The notes under the pieces are model-generated. The model was given only the letters and a program-made list of their open reading frames with translations. It made no database searches and was not told where the DNA came from. A program made the position numbers and the translations under genes. Positions 21,545 through 47,128 of a stretch of 64,000 bases of DNA are shown here, piece after piece (position 1 is the first letter of the stretch; the number at the start of each line of letters is the position of its first letter). The stretch spans positions 62,001 through 126,000 of the IMG/VR virus record IMGVR_UViG_3300027782_000027; one strand, 5' to 3'.

Positions 21545-22369
21545 TTAATTTGTGTGTAACTTTTTTGAGAATAATTGCATTTCAATTATCTGAAATTCCA
21601 ATTCAGGTATATCATATTTTATATCAAAAATTGTTGATAATGTTCTATCAACAATATATTCTGAATCAACTGGATTAATTTCAATATTTAAATTGTATGA
21701 ATTTGACAACATTTTAACTAAATCATATTTTGAGACTTGAGTTGGTGAGATGAAATGTTTAGTTCCCTTCCAAAAATCTTTGTTATTTATAATTTTTTCT
21801 ACTAATTTAGCCCATTCTAAACAAGTTATACCGTTCCAAAAATGATTCAGAAACCCATTAACTTTATTATTTTTTTGACTTTTAACCCATTCAACTAAAG
21901 ACCTATGTTGATTAATTTCTTCCCCAATTATTGAAGTTCGAATTATTGTGCAATTTTTTGGTTCCCCAATAGCCTTAGACATACCATATACATCATCAAC
22001 ATCATATTTATCTTTTTCATTATATTTCCCTTTTTTACCTGAATATACACAATCTGTTGTTGGGTGAATCATGTCCCATTTATTTTTTTCGCAAATATTT
22101 GATAACATTCTTGGAAATACTGAGTTAACTAAAATAGCATTTAAATCCCCTAATTGGTCAACTCTTGGTTTAATAGTACCAATACAATTTATGATAACGT
22201 CTCCCTGATTTACACCACAATTAATTAAAATTTCTTCTAATGTTTTTTCTGTTTGTTGAGAGGCGTCAAGAACATCTCTATTAATTTCGTTAACATTAAA
22301 TTTTTCGGATAAATAAGTGTAAACATATTTACCTAACATACCTTTTGAACCTAAAATATAAATTTTCAT
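21545..22369 (-). CDS. rmlD: dTDP-4-dehydrorhamnose reductase-like SDR
   Basis: ILGSKGMLG, INCIG, TTDCVYSG, YGMSK and IIRTSIIG motifs. Confidence 0.85.
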   Translation of the reverse strand: MKIYILGSKGMLGKYVYTYLSEKFNVNEINRDVLDASQQTEKTLEEILINCGVNQGDVIINCIGTIKPRVDQLGDLNAILVNSVFPRMLSNICEKNKWDMIHPTTDCVYSGKKGKYNEKDKYDVDDVYGMSKAIGEPKNCTIIRTSIIGEEINQHRSLVEWVKSQKNNKVNGFLNHFWNGITCLEWAKLVEKIINNKDFWKGTKHFISPTQVSKYDLVKMLSNSYNLNIEINPVDSEYIVDRTLSTIFDIKYDIPELEFQIIEMQLFSKKLHTN

Positions 22370-24639: not shown

Positions 24640-25563
24640 TTATTTAACAAATTCATTAATTAAATTAATCCATTTTTCACGACAACGCTCTAATGTGTAT
24701 TCTTTTGAATAATATTCACGTGGTGTAAATAATTGACGATTATTTGTAACATATCTTATTGTTTCAGGAAAATCTTCGTCATTAGCAACTAATCCCCATG
24801 TTTCATCATCTTTTCTATCTAAATAACACCCCATAGGTCTTGCGACCATTGGTATATTACACGCACCTATTTCTATCCCAGCAAAATGACCTTCTTCATT
24901 TCCCGATGTACAAATACCACATACTGATGAATTAATTAAAAGTCTAACTGTAGTTGTGTCAACTCTATTAAATATTTTTACCCTATCTTTACTATGAGAA
25001 GGAATAATATCAATTGTTGTATTATCTTTCATTACTAAACAAAAATTAAAATCAGGCATTTGCTCAATTAGATTTAAAACTCTATGAAATCCTTTTTTTT
25101 CATTAGAAGAATCACCTATAAAAATAATTGAATTAGGTAAAACATCAGGATGTTTTTCAGGGATGGGTTTAAAAAAATCAAAATCAGAAGATTGTTCAAT
25201 TATCCTTACGTTTTTTGGATTAATTCTTTCTTTGTATATATTATACGTTTCTTTTGATGCAAATACCACACATGTACATGAATTTATGACTTCAGTCTGC
25301 ATTGGATTGTTCATAGTATCTTGTATTAAACAAAATGTTGGAACATCAATATTAAGTTTACGAAAATAACTACCGTTTCTAATTATATAATCTGGGCGAT
25401 TCTCAATTGATTCTATTCTATCTGCTAATATAGAATAATCTGTATATCCATCGCATTTATCTTGAAGATTGGGAAACCAATCTAATAAGTCATGCCAAAA
25501 TGTTCTTGTATTAGGAATACAAGTCAATCTATCATTAACTAACCACCCAATTTTGTTTTTCAT
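24640..25563 (-). CDS. GT4-like glycosyltransferase
   Basis: KKGFHRVL; CTSGNEEGHFAGIEIGACNIPMV (EX7E motif). Confidence 0.75.
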   Translation of the reverse strand: MKNKIGWLVNDRLTCIPNTRTFWHDLLDWFPNLQDKCDGYTDYSILADRIESIENRPDYIIRNGSYFRKLNIDVPTFCLIQDTMNNPMQTEVINSCTCVVFASKETYNIYKERINPKNVRIIEQSSDFDFFKPIPEKHPDVLPNSIIFIGDSSNEKKGFHRVLNLIEQMPDFNFCLVMKDNTTIDIIPSHSKDRVKIFNRVDTTTVRLLINSSVCGICTSGNEEGHFAGIEIGACNIPMVARPMGCYLDRKDDETWGLVANDEDFPETIRYVTNNRQLFTPREYYSKEYTLERCREKWINLINEFVK

Positions 25564-38289: not shown

Positions 38290-41214
38290 ATGGCTCAACA
38301 GAATATAAATCAGTTCAATTTTAAAAAGTGGTATGTTAAACCTGTCCCAAAAATTTTTGACATTTGTTTAGCATCAGATGAAAAAGATTATAACGAAGAA
38401 GTTGTATTTTCAACTAATCTTATTGGTTATAATGATGGTAATAGATTACCTATTTATTTTGATTTAAACAATCCTTTATCATCACAAGAACTAACAATTA
38501 ATTATGGTGATTTTTTATCAGGTAATACTTTAGTTTCATTAAATTACTACAATCCACTAAATGAAGATTTAAATTGTTTAACGGCTTCTACATTATGTGA
38601 TATTGGGTTAACAGGTATAGATAACGGTTTAGTTCCGCAGATGACTGGTGAAACAATCAATTATACGATGGGGCTATTTACCGGGTCGAGTAAGTGGGAT
38701 AGATATCATTTTGATAGAAGAACAAAACTATTTCAAGTAACGGGTTATACAAATCCTCCAAACGAAAGATTTTCAGGGAATACAAAACAAACTTTGTATA
38801 ATATGGTTTCAGAATCAGGTTATACTATAACATATTACAATCAATTATATGGTGGTTTTTACCAAGGGTTCTTTAGTTTGTTTGGGTATGATTACGAAAC
38901 ATTCCCAAATAGAACAAACGAAGGGTGGACTGTTGAGATGTTGATTAGACCAAGATATGTTGATGAATTTTATCCAACCAACACTCAAACAACTTTAAAT
39001 TTAACATATCCTGAAAATGAAAATACTTTTTTTTATTTTGGGGCAAGAGCTGAAAATAAATTTTATCATCATGCCTCAGGTTCACCATCTTCAGATAGTG
39101 GATATACAAGAGTTACAAGTGTTTTAAGCGGATGTTTAGAAACTTGTGCATGTTCAAACACAGGTGTTACTAATTCAAGGTGTGTTGAAGTATATGAACC
39201 TTTAGTTTATAAAGCTCAGCATAATACCGATTGTAACTGTGGGTGTAACGCAACCACACAAGTTCCAAATAGTGATAAAGACCCGTTATATGACTCAATG
39301 TCAAACTCGTTTTCTTTAAGATTGTCTGGTGACCCAAAAAACCCAAAAGTTTGTGTTAAAGTATTAACATTTACAGGAGGTTGTGTTACAACGGGGACAT
39401 GTCCAACAACGGGAATTACATATCAAACAGGTTATACTATTACAGAATATTGTTCATCAAATCAAATTTTTGATTATTGTGAAGATTTAAATTCTGATTA
39501 TACAACAAAAGAACATTGGATTTTAGTTGATTGTGTGTGGGAAAGAAGTACTTACTTTGATACTTGTGATTTATATTACAGGGGTGGATTAGGATTGATT
39601 AGTGATACAGAGTATGTTGATAGTTTATCAAATAATAGTATATTACTTATTCAACCACCTATTACTCATGAGGGTTCGGCACCTGCTGAAGAGGTTGAAA
39701 TTGTTAACCTAAATGAAAGATGGTTAATTGAGAGAGAAGATAGATTAGGTGTTTTAAAAATTTATATTAACGGAAGATTATTTTATGTCATTAATGGATT
39801 TGAAGAAGTAATTCCAAGAGCTCTAAACACAGAAAAAGAAAAACAATTAGGTGTTCCGTTTAATATATCTTGGGGTGGCGGCACACAAGGGTTAAGGGAA
39901 AGTTTAACCTTTACAGGATGTCCAACAACCTTAACAGGATTGACTTACATGCAAGACCCTGAGGTTATGCCAAATCAAACATTATCAGGAACATCATATT
40001 CGGCATTAACAACTAACATATTATTAGAACCAACATTTGGTGGTACATTTGACGGGGCAATTTCTCAGTTTAGAATGTATACTGAACCATTAAGTTATCC
40101 TGAAATTATACATAATTTTGATATTTTAAAAAGTCCTTTTTTACTTTTTGATTATGGATGCCCCGACTGTACAGACAGTTTAATCAATGATATTTGTTTA
40201 TTAGTATCAGGCAATAATCTTACAGTTACTTCAACCACTTTTGCAAATAGAACATTTAATTTGTATTACGAAGTTTCTCCTGAAATACCAAGATACTTAA
40301 TAACATCTGCTCAAACTTTTCCATTTACTGTGGATAATACAACAATACCAAATTGTTGTTATAATAATTTTTATCTATATCTTATAGAAGATGACCAAAC
40401 ATTTATTTTAACTTGCTTTGACCCAAGTAGACCAACACCAACCCCTACACCAACAGTCACACCAACCCCATCAATGACTCCGACAATTACACCAACACCA
40501 TCAATTACACCAACAATTTACGCATCCCCAACACCAACAACAACACCTACACCAACTAATACTGAAACTCCAACACCTACACCAACAAACACACCTACCG
40601 TAACTCAAACACCAACTAATACTGCTACGGTTACACAGACTCCGACTAATACTGTAACACCTAGTCAAACAGCGACAAACACACCAACTGTAACGCAAAC
40701 ACCAACGGTAACATCAACAGTGACTAATACACCAACGGTTACCAAAACACCAACGGTAACTCCGACAACTAGTTTAACTCCATCACCATCACCGGCGGAA
40801 CCTTTAAATATGTATGTGATTGGTAATGAAAAAAATGGTGACTGTTCAGTATCAAGTATGGTAGTTCAATATAGAAATATTAATGGTAATTATGTAAGTC
40901 AAACTTTAGGTTCACTCACAGATATTGGTTATATGACGGTTATATCTTATGCTAGTTATCCACCAAGATGGATATCAGGGCCAGCGTCACCTGATGGATT
41001 TGATTTAATTGACTTAGGAACTTATACATCAACAAGTTGTTATAATTTCCAATTAACAACTTATTGTCAAACATTACCACCTGACTTAACTTTAAATTAT
41101 GTGGATTGTAATGGTGTGAGTCAAACTATAGATTACGCAGGTGAAAGTGAGTATTCTTTCTCGGCAAGAACATTTACGGCTGAAAACAAAATACAAATTC
41201 AGAAACTACCTTAA
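38290..41214 (+). CDS. Virion protein with LamG-like region, Cys-rich segments and Thr/Pro stalk
   Basis: [20 protein letters not shown] (LamG-like), multiple CxC motifs, and a TPT repeat of about 120 aa. Confidence 0.8.
40430..40797 (+). repeat. Coding Thr-Pro low-complexity repeat
   Basis: [19 protein letters not shown]...[11 protein letters not shown]. Confidence 0.9.
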
Positions 41215-41221
41215 ATTTAAT

Positions 41222-41250
41222 TTGACTTATAATATTTAATTGGTTAATCT
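41222..41250 (+). promoter_or_regulatory. Sigma70-type promoter TTGACT-N17-TAATCT (DNA polymerase)
   Basis: -35 at 41222-41227 and -10 at 41245-41250. Confidence 0.65.
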
Positions 41251-41257
41251 TACCACA

Positions 41258-41285
41258 TAAGGTAAATTCCGACCTTAATTCGGAA
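41258..41285 (+). promoter_or_regulatory. Putative H-type RNA pseudoknot in the polymerase 5' leader
   Basis: UAAGGU (41258-63) pairs with ACCUUA (41272-77); UUCCG (41267-71) pairs with CGGAA (41281-85). Confidence 0.5.
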
Positions 41286-41308
41286 GCAAATACACCATTT
41301 TAAATTTT

Positions 41309-44089
41309 ATGATATCAAACGAAGAAATTGAAAATTTCCTTCAGGGAAATGATGACGAAAAATATATCGTCAGTGTTGAATACGATTACGTCAAAGATTG
41401 TGTTTGGAAAATTCTTGAACACCCAATTCACGGAAAACAAATTAAAAAAGATACCTTCATCCCATTTGCTTGGGTAGGTGACTTACGTGGATTAAACTTT
41501 TATAAATCCTCAAAAGCATTACAGAAAGAAGCAATGACAAAACATAAAATTGTCATTGAGAAATTAAGAACAGATGGTAATGAACGATTAGAAAAAGGTT
41601 TAACTTTTATGGTTAAGTCTTTAAACGGATATCGTTCACTCATTCAGTTTTTTAGAGATGGTGGTGTTGACCCATGGGGTGAAACAACTAAAGGATTGGT
41701 ATTAATATTACCACCTGTTGAACAATTTTTGGTAACCAAAGAGAAACGATTATTCAAAGGATTTGATGACTACAATAGTATCACAAGATTTGTATTTGAC
41801 TTAGAGACGACTGCATTAGAACCAAAGGATGGTCGTATATTCATGATAGGGATGAAAACCAATAAAGGTTTTAGTCAGGTAATTGAGTGTTCAGATGAAG
41901 ACCAAGAAAGAGAAGGTATCATTAAATTTTTTAATACCATAGATGAACTTAAACCAAGTATTATCGCGTCATACAACGGATTTAACTTTGACTGGTTATG
42001 GATTTTTGAAAGAGCCAAAGCCTTAAAATTAGATATTAAAAAAATTGCCAAGACATTAAATCCAATCAACCCAATCAAACAATCTGAAAGTATGTTGAAA
42101 TTGGCAAACGAGGTTGAAAGATTTAATCAGACATCCATGTGGGGTTATAACGTTATTGACACGTTACATGCCGTTAGAAGAGCTCAGGCAATCAATTCAT
42201 CCATCAAATCAGCCGGTTTGAAGTATATTACCCAATACATTAAGGCAGAATCACCTGACCGTGTTTATATTGACCACACAGACATTGGTTCATTTTACTC
42301 AAAGAAAGAAGATTTTTGGTTAAATATACAAAACGGAAAATATAAGAAAGTGGGTGTTGACCCAAAGATTGATGACGCTTGTTCCAAACACTCAAGTATC
42401 TACATTAAGACAACAGGTGATGACTTGGTTGAACGATACCTTGACGATGACTTAGAAGAAACTTTAACGGTTGACGAAGAATTTAACCAAGGTTCATTCC
42501 TACTCGCATCTTTAGTTCCCACAACATATGAAAGAGTTTCAACAATGGGAACGGCAACATTATGGGAAATCCAAATGAGAGCTTGGTCATATAAGAACAT
42601 GTTGGCAATTCCTAAAAAGAATGAAAAAACAGAATTTGTAGGAGGCTTATCACGATTACTTAAAGTAGGATTTTCAACTGATGTATTGAAACTTGACTTC
42701 TCGTCACTTTATCCTTCAATTCAACTTGAACACGATGTATTCCCAACTTGTGATATTACAGGGGCGATGAAGGGTATGTTAAATTACTTCCGTAATACTC
42801 GTATCAAATATAAAAACTTGGCAAAAGAATATCAGGATATTGATAAAAAGCAAGCAACATCATTTGACAGAAAACAATTACCAATTAAGATTTTTATTAA
42901 CTCCATGTTTGGAGCTCTATCGGCTCCACAAGTATTTCACTGGGGTGACATGTATATGGGTGAACAGATTACCTGTACAGGACGACAATACCTTCGTCAG
43001 ATGTTACGTTTCTTTATGAAGAGAGGATATGTTGCGTTAGTGTGTGATACGGATGGTATGAACTTCTCATTACCTGAAGGTGGTGTAGACGATAGAAGAT
43101 ATATCGGTAAGGGAAAGAATTGGTTAGTTAAAGAGGGTAAAGAATATAAAGGATATGATGCCGATGTTGCCGAGTTTAACGATATGTTTATGAAAGGAGC
43201 CATGGGGTTAGATTGTGATGGGACTTGGAAATCCTGTATGAATATCGCTCGTAAGAACTACGCAACAATGGAACATAATGGTAAGATTAAACTTACAGGT
43301 AACTCAATCAAGAGTAAAAAACTTCCACTTTATATTGAGGACTTCTTGGATAAAGGAATTAAAATGTTATTGGAAGGTAACGGACAAGATTTTGTTGAGT
43401 GGTACTATGAATATTTGGAAATAATCTTTAACCAACAAATCCCTTTAATGAAGATTGCACAAAGAGCAAAAGTAAAACTATCTATTGACGATTACAACAA
43501 ACGTTCAAACGAAAAAACAAAGGCAGGTCATATGATGTCAAGACAAGCCCATATGGAACTTGCAATTCGTGACGGTATTGCGGTAAGTTTGGGTGATGTA
43601 ATATTTTATGTTAATAACGGTCTTAAAGCATCACATGGAGATGTTCAAAAGGTAAATGAAAAAATGTCTAAGCAAGAAAAAGACCAGTATAGTTTATTTC
43701 ATGGTAAAGAACCTGTGTTAGGTTCACACGTCCAACTTAATTGTTATCGTATTGACCCCTCAGATTTAGAGAATAACCCTACTATGACAGGTGAATATAA
43801 CATTGCAAGAGCAGTTGCTACTTTCAACAAACGTATTGAACCATTATTGATTGTGTTTAACGAAGAAATTAGAAATAATTTAATTGTTACTGACCCTAAA
43901 GACAGAGGTTTATTTACCAAAGAACAATGTAGACTAACCAATGGTATTCCTTTTGAATCTGGTGACCAAGATAGTATTGAAGATTTGTTAACTATTACAG
44001 ACCAAGAAATGGTGTATTGGGGTAAACGAGGAATTGACCCTGAATACATTTACGAACTTGCAGAAGAAGGGTGGGAAGAGATGGTATAA
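41309..44089 (+). CDS. Family B DNA polymerase
   Basis: FDLET, YNGFNFD, LDFSSLYPS, KIFINSMFG, CDTDG and RKNY motifs. Confidence 0.95.
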   Translation: MISNEEIENFLQGNDDEKYIVSVEYDYVKDCVWKILEHPIHGKQIKKDTFIPFAWVGDLRGLNFYKSSKALQKEAMTKHKIVIEKLRTDGNERLEKGLTFMVKSLNGYRSLIQFFRDGGVDPWGETTKGLVLILPPVEQFLVTKEKRLFKGFDDYNSITRFVFDLETTALEPKDGRIFMIGMKTNKGFSQVIECSDEDQEREGIIKFFNTIDELKPSIIASYNGFNFDWLWIFERAKALKLDIKKIAKTLNPINPIKQSESMLKLANEVERFNQTSMWGYNVIDTLHAVRRAQAINSSIKSAGLKYITQYIKAESPDRVYIDHTDIGSFYSKKEDFWLNIQNGKYKKVGVDPKIDDACSKHSSIYIKTTGDDLVERYLDDDLEETLTVDEEFNQGSFLLASLVPTTYERVSTMGTATLWEIQMRAWSYKNMLAIPKKNEKTEFVGGLSRLLKVGFSTDVLKLDFSSLYPSIQLEHDVFPTCDITGAMKGMLNYFRNTRIKYKNLAKEYQDIDKKQATSFDRKQLPIKIFINSMFGALSAPQVFHWGDMYMGEQITCTGRQYLRQMLRFFMKRGYVALVCDTDGMNFSLPEGGVDDRRYIGKGKNWLVKEGKEYKGYDADVAEFNDMFMKGAMGLDCDGTWKSCMNIARKNYATMEHNGKIKLTGNSIKSKKLPLYIEDFLDKGIKMLLEGNGQDFVEWYYEYLEIIFNQQIPLMKIAQRAKVKLSIDDYNKRSNEKTKAGHMMSRQAHMELAIRDGIAVSLGDVIFYVNNGLKASHGDVQKVNEKMSKQEKDQYSLFHGKEPVLGSHVQLNCYRIDPSDLENNPTMTGEYNIARAVATFNKRIEPLLIVFNEEIRNNLIVTDPKDRGLFTKEQCRLTNGIPFESGDQDSIEDLLTITDQEMVYWGKRGIDPEYIYELAEEGWEEMV

Positions 44090-44091
44090 TG

Positions 44092-44130
44092 AAAAAAGGA
44101 ATATGTTAAAAATACATATTCCTTTTTTTT
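44092..44130. terminator. Bidirectional terminator
   Basis: AAAAAAGGAATATGT-loop-ACATATTCCTTTTTT between convergent genes. Confidence 0.85.
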
Positions 44131-44464
44131 ATGATTGTTTTAATCCGTCTGAGGAAACTACAAACCATGAACCAAATGCATAATATAGTTCAACACAAGC
44201 GCCTTTTTCAATATTAATTTCACTATACTCTTCATCAATCAAACCTTCAATGGGTTTGATTTTTGTATTTGTAAGTGCTTTAACAATTACGTGGTCAGTA
44301 TTGTTATGATTTAAAATGATTTTAATTTCATCTAATTCTTTTGTAATAACTACTGATTCTCCTTCTGTTGTATAACTTTCATCTGAAACCATACATACTT
44401 CAGATGTTGTTAAAACTTGGTTCCCGATAACACGTCTCATCGGAATTGATTTTTGTATACTCAT
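44129..44464 (-). CDS. Hypothetical small beta-rich virion protein
   Basis: 111-aa ORF downstream of the neck gene. Confidence 0.7.
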   Translation of the reverse strand: MSIQKSIPMRRVIGNQVLTTSEVCMVSDESYTTEGESVVITKELDEIKIILNHNNTDHVIVKALTNTKIKPIEGLIDEEYSEINIEKGACVELYYAFGSWFVVSSDGLKQS

Positions 44465-44468
44465 AAAA

Positions 44469-45599
44469 TTATATTACATACATATTTCTTGGGAACGCTC
44501 TGAACTTCATTTGTTTGTTAAGATTTTCAGCAATTAATGCCTCACGTTCCATTATTTTTTCAGGTCTTAATCTTGTCAATCTACCATCTGCTCCAATTAA
44601 CTCCTCAATCAATTTTGTTTTTTCATCTTTACCCTCAGTGGCTAAAGTAGCGTAATCCATAGTTAATTCAGAGTCAGGTGTCTTTAAGTTTCCTGAATAT
44701 TTTCCTCTAACTTTTGATAATGTTTCTTTACAACTTGCTACAAAATATCTTCTAACCCACTGTTGTGCGGGGTCATTTAAGTCAACCCAACCAATTGAAT
44801 TCATCGGAACATCTGAAGGAAGTTTAATAATATCAGGATTTGCAGCTAAACAAGCATCTCTATCCTGAGGTCCAACATCGTAATACCAATACCATACTTG
44901 GTGATGGTTTAATGATGAACTACCAAAGTCAAATTTACCACCAGGTGTCTGCATTAAATGAATTGCCTTTTTACCATTAGGTAATCCTGTTATTCTATAA
45001 GTTAAATCACCACCAATAATTCTTCTTTGGATATTAATTTCTTGCATTCTTAATAACATATCAAATGCGGATGTCATAAAGTATGAACCCGAACCACCCA
45101 TTTGAGCAAAACCACCAGGTCCACCAATGCCTGTACCACCTAAAGCCCCAAAACTCCATGGGTCAAATAATACATTATTTAACGTTGCCGGTGTAAACCA
45201 TAATAATTCATTGATTTCACGACCTGCGGGTATTTCATAAATCTGTTGGTTTGGAACTAATGTGATATAATCTTTTTTAAGTTCCCAATCACCAAGAGGT
45301 GATGATTGTAAACCAACTATTTTAGAGTATGCCTGAGCATATCTGTTTTCGTAATCTAAACTCTTAGTTACAAATGCTCTTGATAATGATTGTGTATCTA
45401 AATTTAAATTATATAATGAAGTCCATTGTGATTCAATTAACCAATCTTGAACATATTGGGAGTAATCCCCGATAGAAAATTCCAAGATTGAATCCATTTG
45501 TTCATCTTCTAATTCAATTGAACGAATTGGTGCTCCGAGTACGTGTCTAACTTTTGTATATAGTTGACTTCTGTATGGTTCTGCGATTATTGTATTCAT
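44469..45599 (-). CDS. Neck/head-tail adaptor (T4 gp13-like)
   Basis: KVRHVLGAPIRSIELEDEQMD (compare gp13 LR.LGAP...VE...Q..D). Confidence 0.8.
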   Translation of the reverse strand: MNTIIAEPYRSQLYTKVRHVLGAPIRSIELEDEQMDSILEFSIGDYSQYVQDWLIESQWTSLYNLNLDTQSLSRAFVTKSLDYENRYAQAYSKIVGLQSSPLGDWELKKDYITLVPNQQIYEIPAGREINELLWFTPATLNNVLFDPWSFGALGGTGIGGPGGFAQMGGSGSYFMTSAFDMLLRMQEINIQRRIIGGDLTYRITGLPNGKKAIHLMQTPGGKFDFGSSSLNHHQVWYWYYDVGPQDRDACLAANPDIIKLPSDVPMNSIGWVDLNDPAQQWVRRYFVASCKETLSKVRGKYSGNLKTPDSELTMDYATLATEGKDEKTKLIEELIGADGRLTRLRPEKIMEREALIAENLNKQMKFRAFPRNMYVI

Positions 45600-45622: not shown

Positions 45623-47128
45623 TCAATTCACAGTATAAATTAAATCTTGTGTTGGGATTTTAAACATACTTGAACTAAAAGCGACAGTTTTGTTTTTAAA
45701 AATATAAACTTCTTTATTAATATTTGAGAAAATTAATAAGTCGGTATTAAACTTTTTGACAAAACCTTTAATTTTAATATTATAGAAACCGTCAATTACT
45801 TCCATACTTAAAATTGGTTTAACTTGAGCGTTTTGTATTTTGTTATCAAAATTCACTGTTAAATCAGTTCCCGCAAAATCTTCTTTTGAACCTAAACTAC
45901 CAACTACAACTGCAGTTCCTTCACCAAATTCTTGATTGATTTTTTTTGCGACATACTCCTCAAGTTGACCACCTTTGTCATGTGTTCTTTTTAAAAGTTT
46001 CATAATCTTATCAAGAGTTTTAGACCCTTTAAAAATTCTTTCACCAAAAAACTCCATATAAGAACAAAATTTATTTATTTCTTCTACTTGTTGTAAAGGT
46101 GTTACCCCAATAAAATTTAATGTGGGTTTATTTAGTTTCGTAAGGACTGCGTTTAAATCATCAACTAAAATCTTAAACCCAATATAATTTGTATTTAATT
46201 TATTAATTACTGAACGACCTGGTTGTTCTAAGTCGTAAATACCTGAAGATGAACCTTCGGAGTGTTGATTGTTTTCATGCCACTTATCAGACAAAACCGT
46301 TTTCAACGTATTATCAATACATCGTCTGTAAGTCCAAAGAACATTTTTGTTGTTACTAAAAATATCTGAGTAATCCGACACGTTTTCGTATAACAGTTTT
46401 TTTGGTGAAGTTGATTCGTTCAATTTTTTTTCAGTTTTTGATTTGTATAACTCATTAACAAATTCCCAGTTGATTACTTCCCAAAAATTTTCAATATATT
46501 CGTCTCTTTTGTTTTGGTATTTTAAATAATATGCGTGTTCCCATAAATCCAAACCTAACAACGGAAAACCACCTTGATTAATTATATTCATAAGTGGGTT
46601 GTCTTGATTTGAGGTGGACATTACTTTTAATCTACCTGTATCGGTTAGAACTAACCAACACCATCCTGAACCAAATCGTTTTTTTGATATTTCTTCAAAT
46701 TTAGTTTTGAAATTACGATACGTCCCAAATTGTTTAACAATTTTTTCAAACACTTCACCACTTGGTTTTTGCGGTGTGGGTGATAACATCTTCCAAAACA
46801 ATGCGTGGTTAAATGCTCCACCTGCGTTATTTCTTATTGTTGTATTATACTTTGATATCTGTTTAACAATATTCTCCAATTCAACATCACCATAATCTTT
46901 TTTACGAAGAGCTGAATTTAATTTTTTAACATACCCCTTGTAATGTTTTTGATAATGAAATTTCATTGTCTCAGGGTCAATAAATCTTCTTAACGATGCG
47001 TATCCATACGGTAGTTTATCAATACCAATGGTTTTCATTTCATTAATAAAAAATTTGGTTTCAGGTTGAGTTTCCTCACCTAACAAACGACTAACTAATG
47101 ACTCTGATACTATATTTAACGATTTCAT
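45623..47128 (-). CDS. Mn/Fe superoxide dismutase fused to a ~260-aa C-terminal domain
   Basis: LPYGY...FHYQKHY, NAGGAFNHALFW and GLDLWEHAYYLKYQN, with all four metal ligands present; long extra C-terminus. Confidence 0.9.
   Translation of the reverse strand: MKSLNIVSESLVSRLLGEETQPETKFFINEMKTIGIDKLPYGYASLRRFIDPETMKFHYQKHYKGYVKKLNSALRKKDYGDVELENIVKQISKYNTTIRNNAGGAFNHALFWKMLSPTPQKPSGEVFEKIVKQFGTYRNFKTKFEEISKKRFGSGWCWLVLTDTGRLKVMSTSNQDNPLMNIINQGGFPLLGLDLWEHAYYLKYQNKRDEYIENFWEVINWEFVNELYKSKTEKKLNESTSPKKLLYENVSDYSDIFSNNKNVLWTYRRCIDNTLKTVLSDKWHENNQHSEGSSSGIYDLEQPGRSVINKLNTNYIGFKILVDDLNAVLTKLNKPTLNFIGVTPLQQVEEINKFCSYMEFFGERIFKGSKTLDKIMKLLKRTHDKGGQLEEYVAKKINQEFGEGTAVVVGSLGSKEDFAGTDLTVNFDNKIQNAQVKPILSMEVIDGFYNIKIKGFVKKFNTDLLIFSNINKEVYIFKNKTVAFSSSMFKIPTQDLIYTVN

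What the first reader, a model, noticed from the sequence alone, without database searches (positions are those of the whole stretch)
41258..41285. H-type pseudoknot at the predicted 5' end of the DNA polymerase mRNA
Seen: S1 UAAGGU/ACCUUA (6 bp), L1 AAA, S2 UUCCG/CGGAA (5 bp) and L3 AUU. It begins where the TTGACT/TAATCT promoter would initiate (about 41257) and ends 23 nt before the ATG. An alternative UUCCGA/UCGGAA hairpin is also possible, and L3 is short. Established: T4 gene 43 (hairpin) and gene 32 (pseudoknot) are translationally autoregulated. Inference: a new operator or switch for polymerase autoregulation.
Basis: partly seen in the sequence, partly recalled or inferred. Interest (0 to 1): 0.65.

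Follow-up and report, generated by a model that had tools for sequence, protein, structure and literature searches.

The report
Conserved RNA hairpin leading phage polymerase mRNA
The proposed pseudoknot is not the conserved fold, but its second stem belongs to a real, apparently undescribed 40-base structured RNA found in front of the DNA polymerase gene in every sampled relative of this uncultivated giant phage, probably a switch that limits how much polymerase is made.

Summary
On one sequence the pattern is no more than chance: 6+5 bp H-type patterns arise about 3.5 times per strand per 64 kb in shuffles, and the leader folds no better than shuffles.

Comparison with 139 distinct polymerase leaders from related viral contigs (PolB about 58-99% identical) gives a different structure.
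- Stem S2, extended to 41267-72/41280-85, covaries strongly.
- The 5' GGU (41261-63) pairs with a downstream ACC (41294-96), not with the loop ACC. This pair forms in 139/139 leaders, in six complementary versions.
- An asymmetric internal loop with invariant A, G and AAU lies between the two helices.

The motif spans 41259-41297. It starts at the predicted transcription start of a conserved promoter and ends 11 nt before the ATG. It occurs once in the 240.8 kb genome and always before polB. It did not turn up in the cellular genomes sampled or in Rfam 15, and it does not match the T4 gene 43 leader.

Best reading: a new cis-regulatory leader RNA, most likely a protein-bound translational operator giving polymerase feedback (inferred, about 0.45). 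A riboswitch or a stabilising 5' structure is not excluded.

The parts
41222..41227 (+). -35-like hexamer TTGACT of the polB promoter
   Evidence: Read directly. TTGAC[A/T]-N17-TAnnnT is found in 82 of 94 related leaders, ending mostly 7-8 nt before the motif. The generic sigma-70 scan did not list it because the -10 is weak.
41245..41250 (+). -10-like hexamer TAATCT. The predicted start is about 41256-41259, at the first bases of the motif.
   Evidence: The start site is inferred from spacing and not measured.
41259..41297 (+). Core of the conserved polB-leader RNA motif (AAG...CA)
   Evidence: Covariance model R1 scores 56.2 bits here (E 3.7e-10). The next best hit in the 240.8 kb genome scores 13 bits. 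All 139 distinct polB leaders carry the motif.
41261..41263 (+). P1 5' strand GGU.
   Evidence: Pairs with 41294-96 and is paired in 139/139 leaders. Types: GGU/ACC 74, GAG/CUC 30, GGG/CCC 22, GAC/GUC 11, GGC/GUC 1, GGU/GCC 1. RNAalifold predicts it de novo.
41264..41266 (+). J1/2, AAA. The last two A are invariant.
   Evidence: Alignments A1-A3.
41267..41272 (+). P2 5' strand UUCCGA.
   Evidence: Pairs with 41280-85. Compensatory changes occur at four of six pairs, and internal wobble pairs are G.U only when read on the + strand.
41273..41279 (+). P2 loop CCUUAAU.
   Evidence: The loop varies in sequence and length among relatives. ACCU recurs only in part of the GGU class.
41280..41285 (+). 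P2 3' strand UCGGAA.
41286..41293 (+). J2/1, GCAAAUAC. The first G and the AAU are invariant; the rest varies, and the segment is 8 or 9 nt in relatives.
41294..41296 (+). P1 3' strand ACC, followed by the invariant A41297
41298..41308 (+). A/U-rich unstructured spacer with no Shine-Dalgarno sequence
   Evidence: Spacer length is 7-20 nt in relatives. No conserved pairing reaches the start codon. Genes of this phage generally lack a Shine-Dalgarno sequence.
41309..44089 (+). Family B DNA polymerase gene (926 aa)
   Evidence: Pfam DNA_pol_B and DNA_pol_B_exo1, and PHROG 262. The closest solved structures are archaeal PolB.
44091..44129 (+). Strong terminator-like hairpin (16 pairs, then a T run) just after the polB stop, so polB appears to be its own transcription unit

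Best explanation
Window 41259-41297 encodes a conserved, gene-specific structured RNA at the extreme 5' end of the polB mRNA.

Structure (shown): a 3-bp closing helix P1 (41261-63 with 41294-96) encloses an asymmetric internal loop, NAA on the 5' side and G..AAU.. on the 3' side. Inside that sits a 5-7 bp hairpin P2 (41267-72 with 41280-85). Many relatives add an outer 4-bp helix P0, which the window's lineage lacks.

Mechanism (inferred): the folded motif is a binding site for a protein, most simply the polymerase itself when it is not engaged on DNA. Occupying the motif, which ends 7-20 nt before the start codon, hinders 30S loading on the adjacent A/U-rich, Shine-Dalgarno-less initiation region. 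The result would be negative feedback on polymerase synthesis. This is functionally analogous to the T4/RB69 gene 43 operator but unrelated to it in sequence and fold.

For: Structure
- P1 is paired in 139/139 distinct leaders, in six complementary versions.
- P2 has compensatory changes at four of six pairs. Overall 94.7% of cells are paired against 82% in shuffles and 20-54% when partners are slid.
- RNAalifold recovers P1 and P2 de novo.
- The window's minimum-free-energy fold is exactly P1+P2.
- P1 is in the minimum-free-energy fold of 92/139 leaders and P2 in 131/139.

Specificity
- There is one copy in the 240.8 kb genome.
- There is one copy in each of the 76 related loci that include the leader, always just upstream of polB.
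- 67 of 80 pattern hits in viral contigs precede a polB homologue, and 11 of the other 13 lack the hairpin.
- Pattern hits in cellular genomes score only 18-31 bits, against 38-61 bits for the polB-linked copies.

Placement
- A conserved promoter ends 7-8 nt before the motif.
- The motif ends 7-20 nt before the ATG.
- No conserved alternative helix reaches the initiation region.
- polB is monocistronic.

Invariant unpaired bases across PolB divergence down to about 58% identity argue for specific recognition.

Precedent: T4 and RB69 DNA polymerases repress their own translation through an upstream hairpin operator (PMC3014915).
Against: - No binding or expression data exist.
- The motif does not overlap the start codon. 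A 3-bp P1 is weak by itself (pair probability about 0.45).
- The PolB is not a T4-type enzyme and the RNA has no similarity to the T4 operator, so the precedent transfers by analogy only.
- The same anatomy, a small irregular hairpin with invariant internal-loop bases, fits a small-molecule aptamer or a site for another phage or host protein.
Confidence: 0.45

Rival explanations
1. The reader's H-type pseudoknot (S1 41258-63/41272-77, S2 41267-71/41281-85) is the functional fold. A weaker version: it is one of two mutually exclusive conformers, 5' GGU pairing either with the loop ACC or with the downstream ACC, and so forms a switch in the window's lineage.
For: - Perfect 6+5 bp complementarity in the window.
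- A crude Dirks-Pierce-style estimate (-6.7 kcal/mol) equals the nested minimum-free-energy fold (-6.6).
- A loop complement of at least 4 Watson-Crick pairs to the 5' end occurs in 34/96 leaders, against 8.7 +/- 2.6 for shuffled loops.
- It persists through several different P2 stems.
Against: - There is no covariation. In the 30 leaders with GGG, GAG, GAC or GGC at the 5' strand, no loop tracks the change.
- It is absent from whole clades with tetraloops.
- A41272 covaries with U41280 and GGU with the 3' ACC, and both conflict with S1.
- From general knowledge of pseudoknot geometry, a 3-nt L3 is short for crossing a 6-bp S1.
- The enrichment is not corrected for shared ancestry.
Confidence: 0.15
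2. The motif is a riboswitch aptamer. A small molecule linked to replication or nucleotide supply binds the conserved internal loop and stabilises P1 (and P0 in relatives), which modulates ribosome access.
For: - The element is compact, with invariant unpaired bases flanked by short covarying helices.
- It sits directly upstream of the initiation region.
- From my own knowledge, several validated riboswitches are irregular hairpins of similar size.
Against: - It is found before only one gene family and only in phage contigs. No convincing copy turned up in cellular genomes.
- No conserved expression-platform helix exists.
- It matches no Rfam family even at E up to 10.
Confidence: 0.15
3. The motif needs no specific trans-acting partner. 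It is a 5'-terminal structure that protects the polB mRNA from 5'-end-dependent decay, or that sets a fixed translation efficiency.
For: The motif begins within a few nucleotides of the predicted 5' end. P1 (or P0) would leave only a 2-4 nt 5' overhang.
Against: A stabilising stem would not need invariant unpaired A, G and AAU bases, or a conserved asymmetric loop, maintained down to about 58% PolB identity.
Confidence: 0.15
4. The element acts at the DNA level (a palindromic operator), is the terminator of the upstream gene, or is a chance pattern.
For: P2 is an inverted repeat next to a promoter. The scan flags it as terminator-like on the minus strand.
Against: - P1 links bases 30 nt apart by compensatory change.
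- Stem sequences vary freely while pairing is kept.
- Internal wobble pairs are G.U only on the + strand.
- No T run follows on the + strand.
- The element lies downstream of its own conserved promoter.
Confidence: 0.03

Closest known systems
Translational operator of T4/RB69 gene 43 (DNA polymerase autoregulation)
   Same: - Both are 5'-UTR RNA elements specific to a family B DNA polymerase gene.
- Both have a hairpin upstream of the initiation region, with a short A/U-rich stretch between hairpin and AUG.
- The T4 hairpin ends 21 nt before the AUG; the window's motif ends 11 nt before it.
- The proposed logic is the same: free polymerase represses its own translation (PMC3014915).
- The T4 loop hexamer AAUAAC recurs in the junction of the GGG/CCC-class relatives. 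This is a lead only.
   Different: - T4 has a simple 5-bp stem and 8-nt loop recognised through loop bases. Here the loop is variable, and the conserved bases lie in an internal loop closed by a second helix.
- Model R1 finds nothing in the T4 leader.
- The polymerases are distant: the closest solved structures are archaeal PolB, with no T4/RB69 hit.
- Binding is untested here.
T4 gene 32 leader pseudoknot
   Same: Both are structured elements near the 5' end of a replication-gene mRNA, followed by A/U-rich sequence.
   Different: - In T4 it is a true H-type pseudoknot that nucleates cooperative binding of the single-strand-binding protein (PMC3014915).
- Here the pseudoknot pairing does not covary and is absent from most lineages.
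- The gene here is not an SSB.
Autoregulatory leaders of bacterial ribosomal-protein operons
   Same: Each is a gene-specific structured leader with covarying helices and conserved unpaired bases, present once per genome ahead of the gene whose product is thought to bind it.
   Different: The protein class is different and the host here is a phage. There is no rRNA-mimicry argument, and none of those families matches in Rfam.
Small irregular-hairpin riboswitches (from my own knowledge, e.g. the xanthine/NMT1 and THF-II classes)
   Same: They are of similar size and architecture: two short helices around a highly conserved internal loop, just upstream of the ribosome binding site.
   Different: Those classes occur in many bacterial genes and taxa and are in Rfam. 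This motif is confined to one phage gene, and no ligand is suggested by its gene context.

Membership tests
H-type pseudoknot as proposed (S1/L1/S2/L3) | Both stems are present in the sequence | tested here: met
   6 bp and 5 bp of perfect complementarity at 41258-85.
H-type pseudoknot as proposed (S1/L1/S2/L3) | Both stems are conserved and supported by covariation in homologues | tested here: not met
   S2 covaries. In 24/47 aligned leaders the loop has no letters opposite the S1 core pairs. S1 shows no compensatory change and is not maintained when the 5' strand changes, with 0-2 of 30 such leaders retaining a complement.
H-type pseudoknot as proposed (S1/L1/S2/L3) | The pattern is more than chance in a single sequence | tested here: not met
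   3.5 such patterns per strand per 64 kb in shuffles, and 8 sites in the window. Folding z-score is -0.18.
T4/RB69 gene 43 translational operator | Hairpin of about 16-18 nt with a conserved loop (UAAC core) recognised by the polymerase | tested here: not met
   The P2 loop varies in length and sequence. R1 gives no hit on the T4 leader.
T4/RB69 gene 43 translational operator | The operator extends over the ribosome binding site | tested here: inconclusive
   The motif ends 7-20 nt before the ATG, 11 nt in the window. There is no Shine-Dalgarno sequence to overlap.
T4/RB69 gene 43 translational operator | The encoded protein is a T4-type gp43 | tested here: not met
   It is family B, but the closest solved chains are archaeal PolB (E about 1e-19), and no T4/RB69 chain scores at E 1e-3 or better.
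T4/RB69 gene 43 translational operator | Specific binding by, and repression through, the polymerase | not testable with these tools
   This needs EMSA or filter binding and reporter assays.
Riboswitch | Conserved aptamer with covarying helices and invariant unpaired bases | tested here: met
Riboswitch | Conserved expression platform or alternative pairing with the initiation region or a terminator | tested here: not met
   RNAalifold on positions -58 to +36 finds only P1 and P2. There is no terminator between the motif and the ATG.
Riboswitch | Ligand binding | not testable with these tools
   This needs in-line probing or ITC.
Any described RNA family (Rfam 15) | Match to a curated covariance model | tested here: not met
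   No family reaches its gathering score in the window. At E up to 10, nothing overlaps the motif on the + strand.
Intrinsic terminator of the upstream gene | G+C-rich hairpin followed by a U run on the transcribed strand | tested here: not met
   P2 is followed by GCAAAUAC on the + strand. It lies downstream of a conserved promoter.

The most novel reading that the evidence does not exclude
The motif is a phage-specific aptamer: a riboswitch-like sensor of a replication-related small molecule, such as a deoxynucleotide, that tunes polymerase synthesis. It would be the first riboswitch class known only from phage genomes and the first to control a DNA polymerase.
Probability: 0.12. Interest if true: 0.9.

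Novelty: new variant of a known kind. Interest (0 to 1): 0.62.

Why it matters
Autoregulation of a replicative DNA polymerase through its own mRNA leader is known experimentally only for T4-like phages. Here an unrelated RNA with strong covariation sits in front of an archaeal-like family B polymerase, in a large group of uncultivated phages that includes jumbo phages of 220-290 kb.

If the polymerase binds it, translational self-control of polymerases has arisen more than once, and a compact new RNA-protein recognition module becomes available for study. If a metabolite binds it, it is a new riboswitch class.

In either case the motif is a precise marker for this phage group, and a clean, testable 40-nt element. 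The result also shows that the visually attractive pseudoknot was the wrong pairing.

Tried and rejected
- Rfam scans of the window at gathering thresholds and of 41150-41400 at E up to 10 gave nothing relevant.
- A megablast of the region against cultured phages gave no match. The protein search found only distant PolB (22-30% identity) in Salinibacter and Nostoc phages.
All 80 inspected score 18-31 bits with R1, with no score in the range of the polB-linked copies, so I treat them as chance.
- Model R1 misses the GGG/CCC and GAG/CUC classes, which have a 9-nt junction. I found those by polB anchoring and a regular expression without pairing constraints. No second model was built, so the statement 'one copy per genome' rests on R1 only.
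- MAFFT misaligns the P2 3' strand of those classes. Their P2 counts are therefore underestimates.
No reads were laid, and the transcript 5' end is unverified.
- I looked for a conserved partner gene. The two convergent downstream genes (111 aa and 376 aa) are conserved neighbours but have no RNA-binding annotation, and the upstream neighbour varies.
- I considered kink-turn, sarcin-ricin, UAA/GAN and loop-junction pseudoknot readings of the internal loop by eye. None fits consistently.
- Literature searches found no description of this motif.
- The polB tree gives 17 changes of P1 type. Leader types are interleaved among near-identical polymerases, so many of these are probably module exchanges and not independent compensatory mutations.

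Full report
**Observation.** TAAGGT is at 41258-63, AAA at 41264-66, TTCCG at 41267-71, ACCTTA at 41272-77, ATT at 41278-80 and CGGAA at 41281-85. TTGACT lies at 41222-27 and TAATCT at 41245-50, separated by 17 nt. The polymerase ATG is at 41309.

Taken alone, the pattern is not remarkable. Perfect 6+5 bp H-type arrangements with short loops appear 3.5 times per strand per 64 kb in dinucleotide shuffles, and at 8 distinct sites on the + strand of this window. The leader folds no better than its shuffles, with z = -0.18.

**Context.**
- The window is part of a 240.8 kb IMG/VR virus record of about 30% G+C.
- The downstream ORF (41309-44089, 926 aa) is a family B DNA polymerase. Its closest solved relatives are archaeal PolB, and no T4/RB69 chain matches at E 1e-3 or better.
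- A 16-pair hairpin with a T run follows the stop codon at 44091-44129, and the next genes converge. polB therefore looks like a single-gene transcription unit with its own promoter.
- Genes of this phage have A-rich leaders without Shine-Dalgarno sequences.

**Relatives.** Three protein-anchored scans of viral contigs, starting from the window's PolB and from two progressively more distant homologues, returned 80 loci each. PolB identity to the window runs from 99% down to about 58%. Selecting by the protein does not bias the RNA comparison. From these loci I obtained 139 distinct leaders, and every one carries the same element.

**Structure.** The aligned leaders share the following parts:
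- an invariant AAG;
- two covarying bases;
- NAA;
- a hairpin with a variable loop;
- a junction that begins with G and contains an invariant AAU;
- two covarying bases;
- CA.

Four of its six pairs show compensatory changes. Internal wobble pairs are G.U only when read on the + strand.

The 5' GGU (41261-63) pairs with ACC 41294-96. This P1 helix is formed in 139/139 leaders in six versions: GGU/ACC 74, GAG/CUC 30, GGG/CCC 22, GAC/GUC 11, GGC/GUC 1 and GGU/GCC 1.

Support from other measures:
- On the 41-sequence alignment, 94.7% of cells pair, against 82% in column shuffles and 20-54% when partners are slid.
- RNAalifold predicts P1 and P2 without guidance and finds nothing that reaches the start codon.
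- The window's own minimum-free-energy fold is P1+P2 at -6.6 kcal/mol.
- In 58 of the 139 relatives an outer 4-bp helix P0 flanks the motif and covaries (UGAG/CUCG, UGUC/GACG, UGUU/AACG, UACU/AGUG, UACC/GGUG). The window's lineage lacks it, consistent with a start site right at the motif.

**The proposed S1.**
- In 24 of 47 aligned leaders the loop has no letters aligned opposite the GGU core pairs, and no compensatory change supports S1.
- In the 30 leaders whose 5' strand is GGG, GAG, GAC or GGC, the loop never carries the matching complement.
- Whole clades have tetraloops.
- S1 also competes for bases whose other partners covary: GGU with the 3' ACC, and A41272 with U41280.

S1 is not pure noise, however. 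A loop complement of at least four Watson-Crick pairs to the 5' end occurs in 34 of 96 leaders, against 8.7 +/- 2.6 for shuffled loops. It survives several changes of the P2 stem, but only within the GGU class. A crude pseudoknot energy estimate (-6.7 kcal/mol) equals the nested fold. A lineage-restricted alternative pairing therefore cannot be excluded, but it is not the conserved architecture.

**Specificity.**
- A covariance model of the motif finds one copy in the whole 240.8 kb genome: 56 bits, with the next best hit at 13 bits.
- It finds one copy in each of the 76 related loci that include the leader, always immediately upstream of polB.
- A sequence-pattern scan of all viral contigs gave 67 of 80 hits in front of polB homologues. 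Two more lie on truncated loci, and 11 lack the hairpin.
- The same pattern in 596 Gb of cellular genomes gave only hits of 18-31 bits, below the 38-61 bits of the polB-linked copies.
- Rfam 15 has no matching family.
- The T4 gene 43 leader, fetched for comparison, is not recognised by the model.

**Placement.** TTGAC[A/T]-N17-TAnnnT is present in 82 of 94 leaders and ends mostly 7-8 nt before the motif. The RNA should therefore begin with the motif. The motif ends 7-20 nt before the ATG, 11 nt in the window, and is followed by an A/U-rich spacer.

**Mechanism.** What is shown: a conserved, strand-specific, gene-specific RNA structure with invariant unpaired bases lies at the 5' end of a monocistronic polB mRNA.

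What is inferred: it is a recognition site whose occupancy controls initiation. I favour a protein, most simply PolB itself, for four reasons.
1. The element is tied to one gene and occurs once per genome, as autoregulatory leaders do.
2. No expression-platform helix exists, so a bulky bound factor is the simplest way to affect a nearby Shine-Dalgarno-less initiation region.
3. The motif is absent from the cellular genomes sampled, unlike known riboswitches.
4. T4 and RB69 polymerases set a precedent (PMC3014915).

I put this at about 0.45. I give about 0.15 each to a riboswitch, to a factor-independent stabilising or tuning structure, and to a pseudoknot-based switch. DNA-level or chance explanations are essentially excluded by the long-range compensatory changes.

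**Novelty.** The kind of regulation, a 5' leader operator on a replication gene, is known. The RNA family, its fold and its association with an archaeal-like PolB in uncultivated phages appear undescribed in Rfam 15 and in the literature I could search.

**Limits.**
- Covariation counts are not tree-corrected. Leader types are interleaved on the polB tree, with 17 changes of P1 type, which suggests exchange of the promoter-leader module. The number of independent compensatory events is therefore smaller than the counts imply.
- The model used for the 'single copy' statement does not detect the 9-nt-junction classes.
- No alternative genetic code was used.

Noticed in passing
window 44091-44129: A 16-pair hairpin flanked by an A run and a T run lies directly after the polB stop, between convergent genes. 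It looks like a bidirectional terminator closing the single-gene polB unit.
   Followed up: partly
window, all ORF starts (for example 21545-22369, 24640-25563): Almost no gene has a Shine-Dalgarno sequence. Leaders are A-rich, which suggests a host with Shine-Dalgarno-independent initiation, possibly Bacteroidota. A few distant relatives do carry AAAGGA before polB (L074, L075, L466).
   Followed up: partly
window 1176, 3027, 4476, 5531, 9179, 13209(-), 38257(-), 45616(-), 47134(-), 54225, 56654: RTATTTAT lies 8-27 nt upstream of at least 11 start codons in the sense orientation. The octamer is not enriched overall (28 found, 25 expected). It may be a phage-specific promoter element, distinct from the TTGAC-type promoter of polB.
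   Followed up: partly
window 45623-47128 (-): A 501-aa protein carries both Fe/Mn superoxide dismutase domains (Pfam E 2.8e-41 and 2.8e-23) in its first half, with an unannotated C-terminal half. It is a conserved neighbour in the window's clade: 77 of 80 loci.
   Followed up: no
L325-L404 (for example L333, L358, L374 against L325, L349, L369): Two clearly different leader versions are interleaved among polymerases that are 80-93% identical: GGU/ACC with an 8-nt junction, and GGG/CCC with a 9-nt junction, a different P2 and a different -10 region. This suggests recombinational exchange of the promoter-leader module.
   Followed up: partly
L406, L410, L413, L420, L459, L074 and others: An extra outer helix P0 of 4 bp flanks the motif in 58 of 139 relatives and covaries. 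In those lineages the -10 box lies 12-22 nt before the motif, so the extra 5' strand would be transcribed. The window's lineage lacks it.
   Followed up: yes
L485 4915-4935 (-) against L358, L361 and L374 leaders: The T4 gene 43 operator loop contains AAUAAC. The same hexamer spans the junction and P1 3' strand of the GGG/CCC-class leaders (the window has AAUACAC). This could be chance in A/U-rich sequence or a shared preference of family B polymerases.
   Followed up: no
window 41250-41254 and 41261-41265: TTACC, which overlaps the end of the -10 hexamer, is complementary to GGTAA, which includes the P1 5' strand. It could compete with P1 only in read-through transcripts from the upstream gene, which ends at 41214 with no terminator before the promoter.
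   Followed up: no
window 44129-44464 (-) and 44469-45599 (-): The two convergent genes after polB (111 aa, no family; 376 aa, weak PHROG match to a head-tail adaptor) are conserved neighbours in nearly all 160 related loci. The gene upstream of polB (38290-41214, 974 aa, unknown) is present in only 50.
   Followed up: partly
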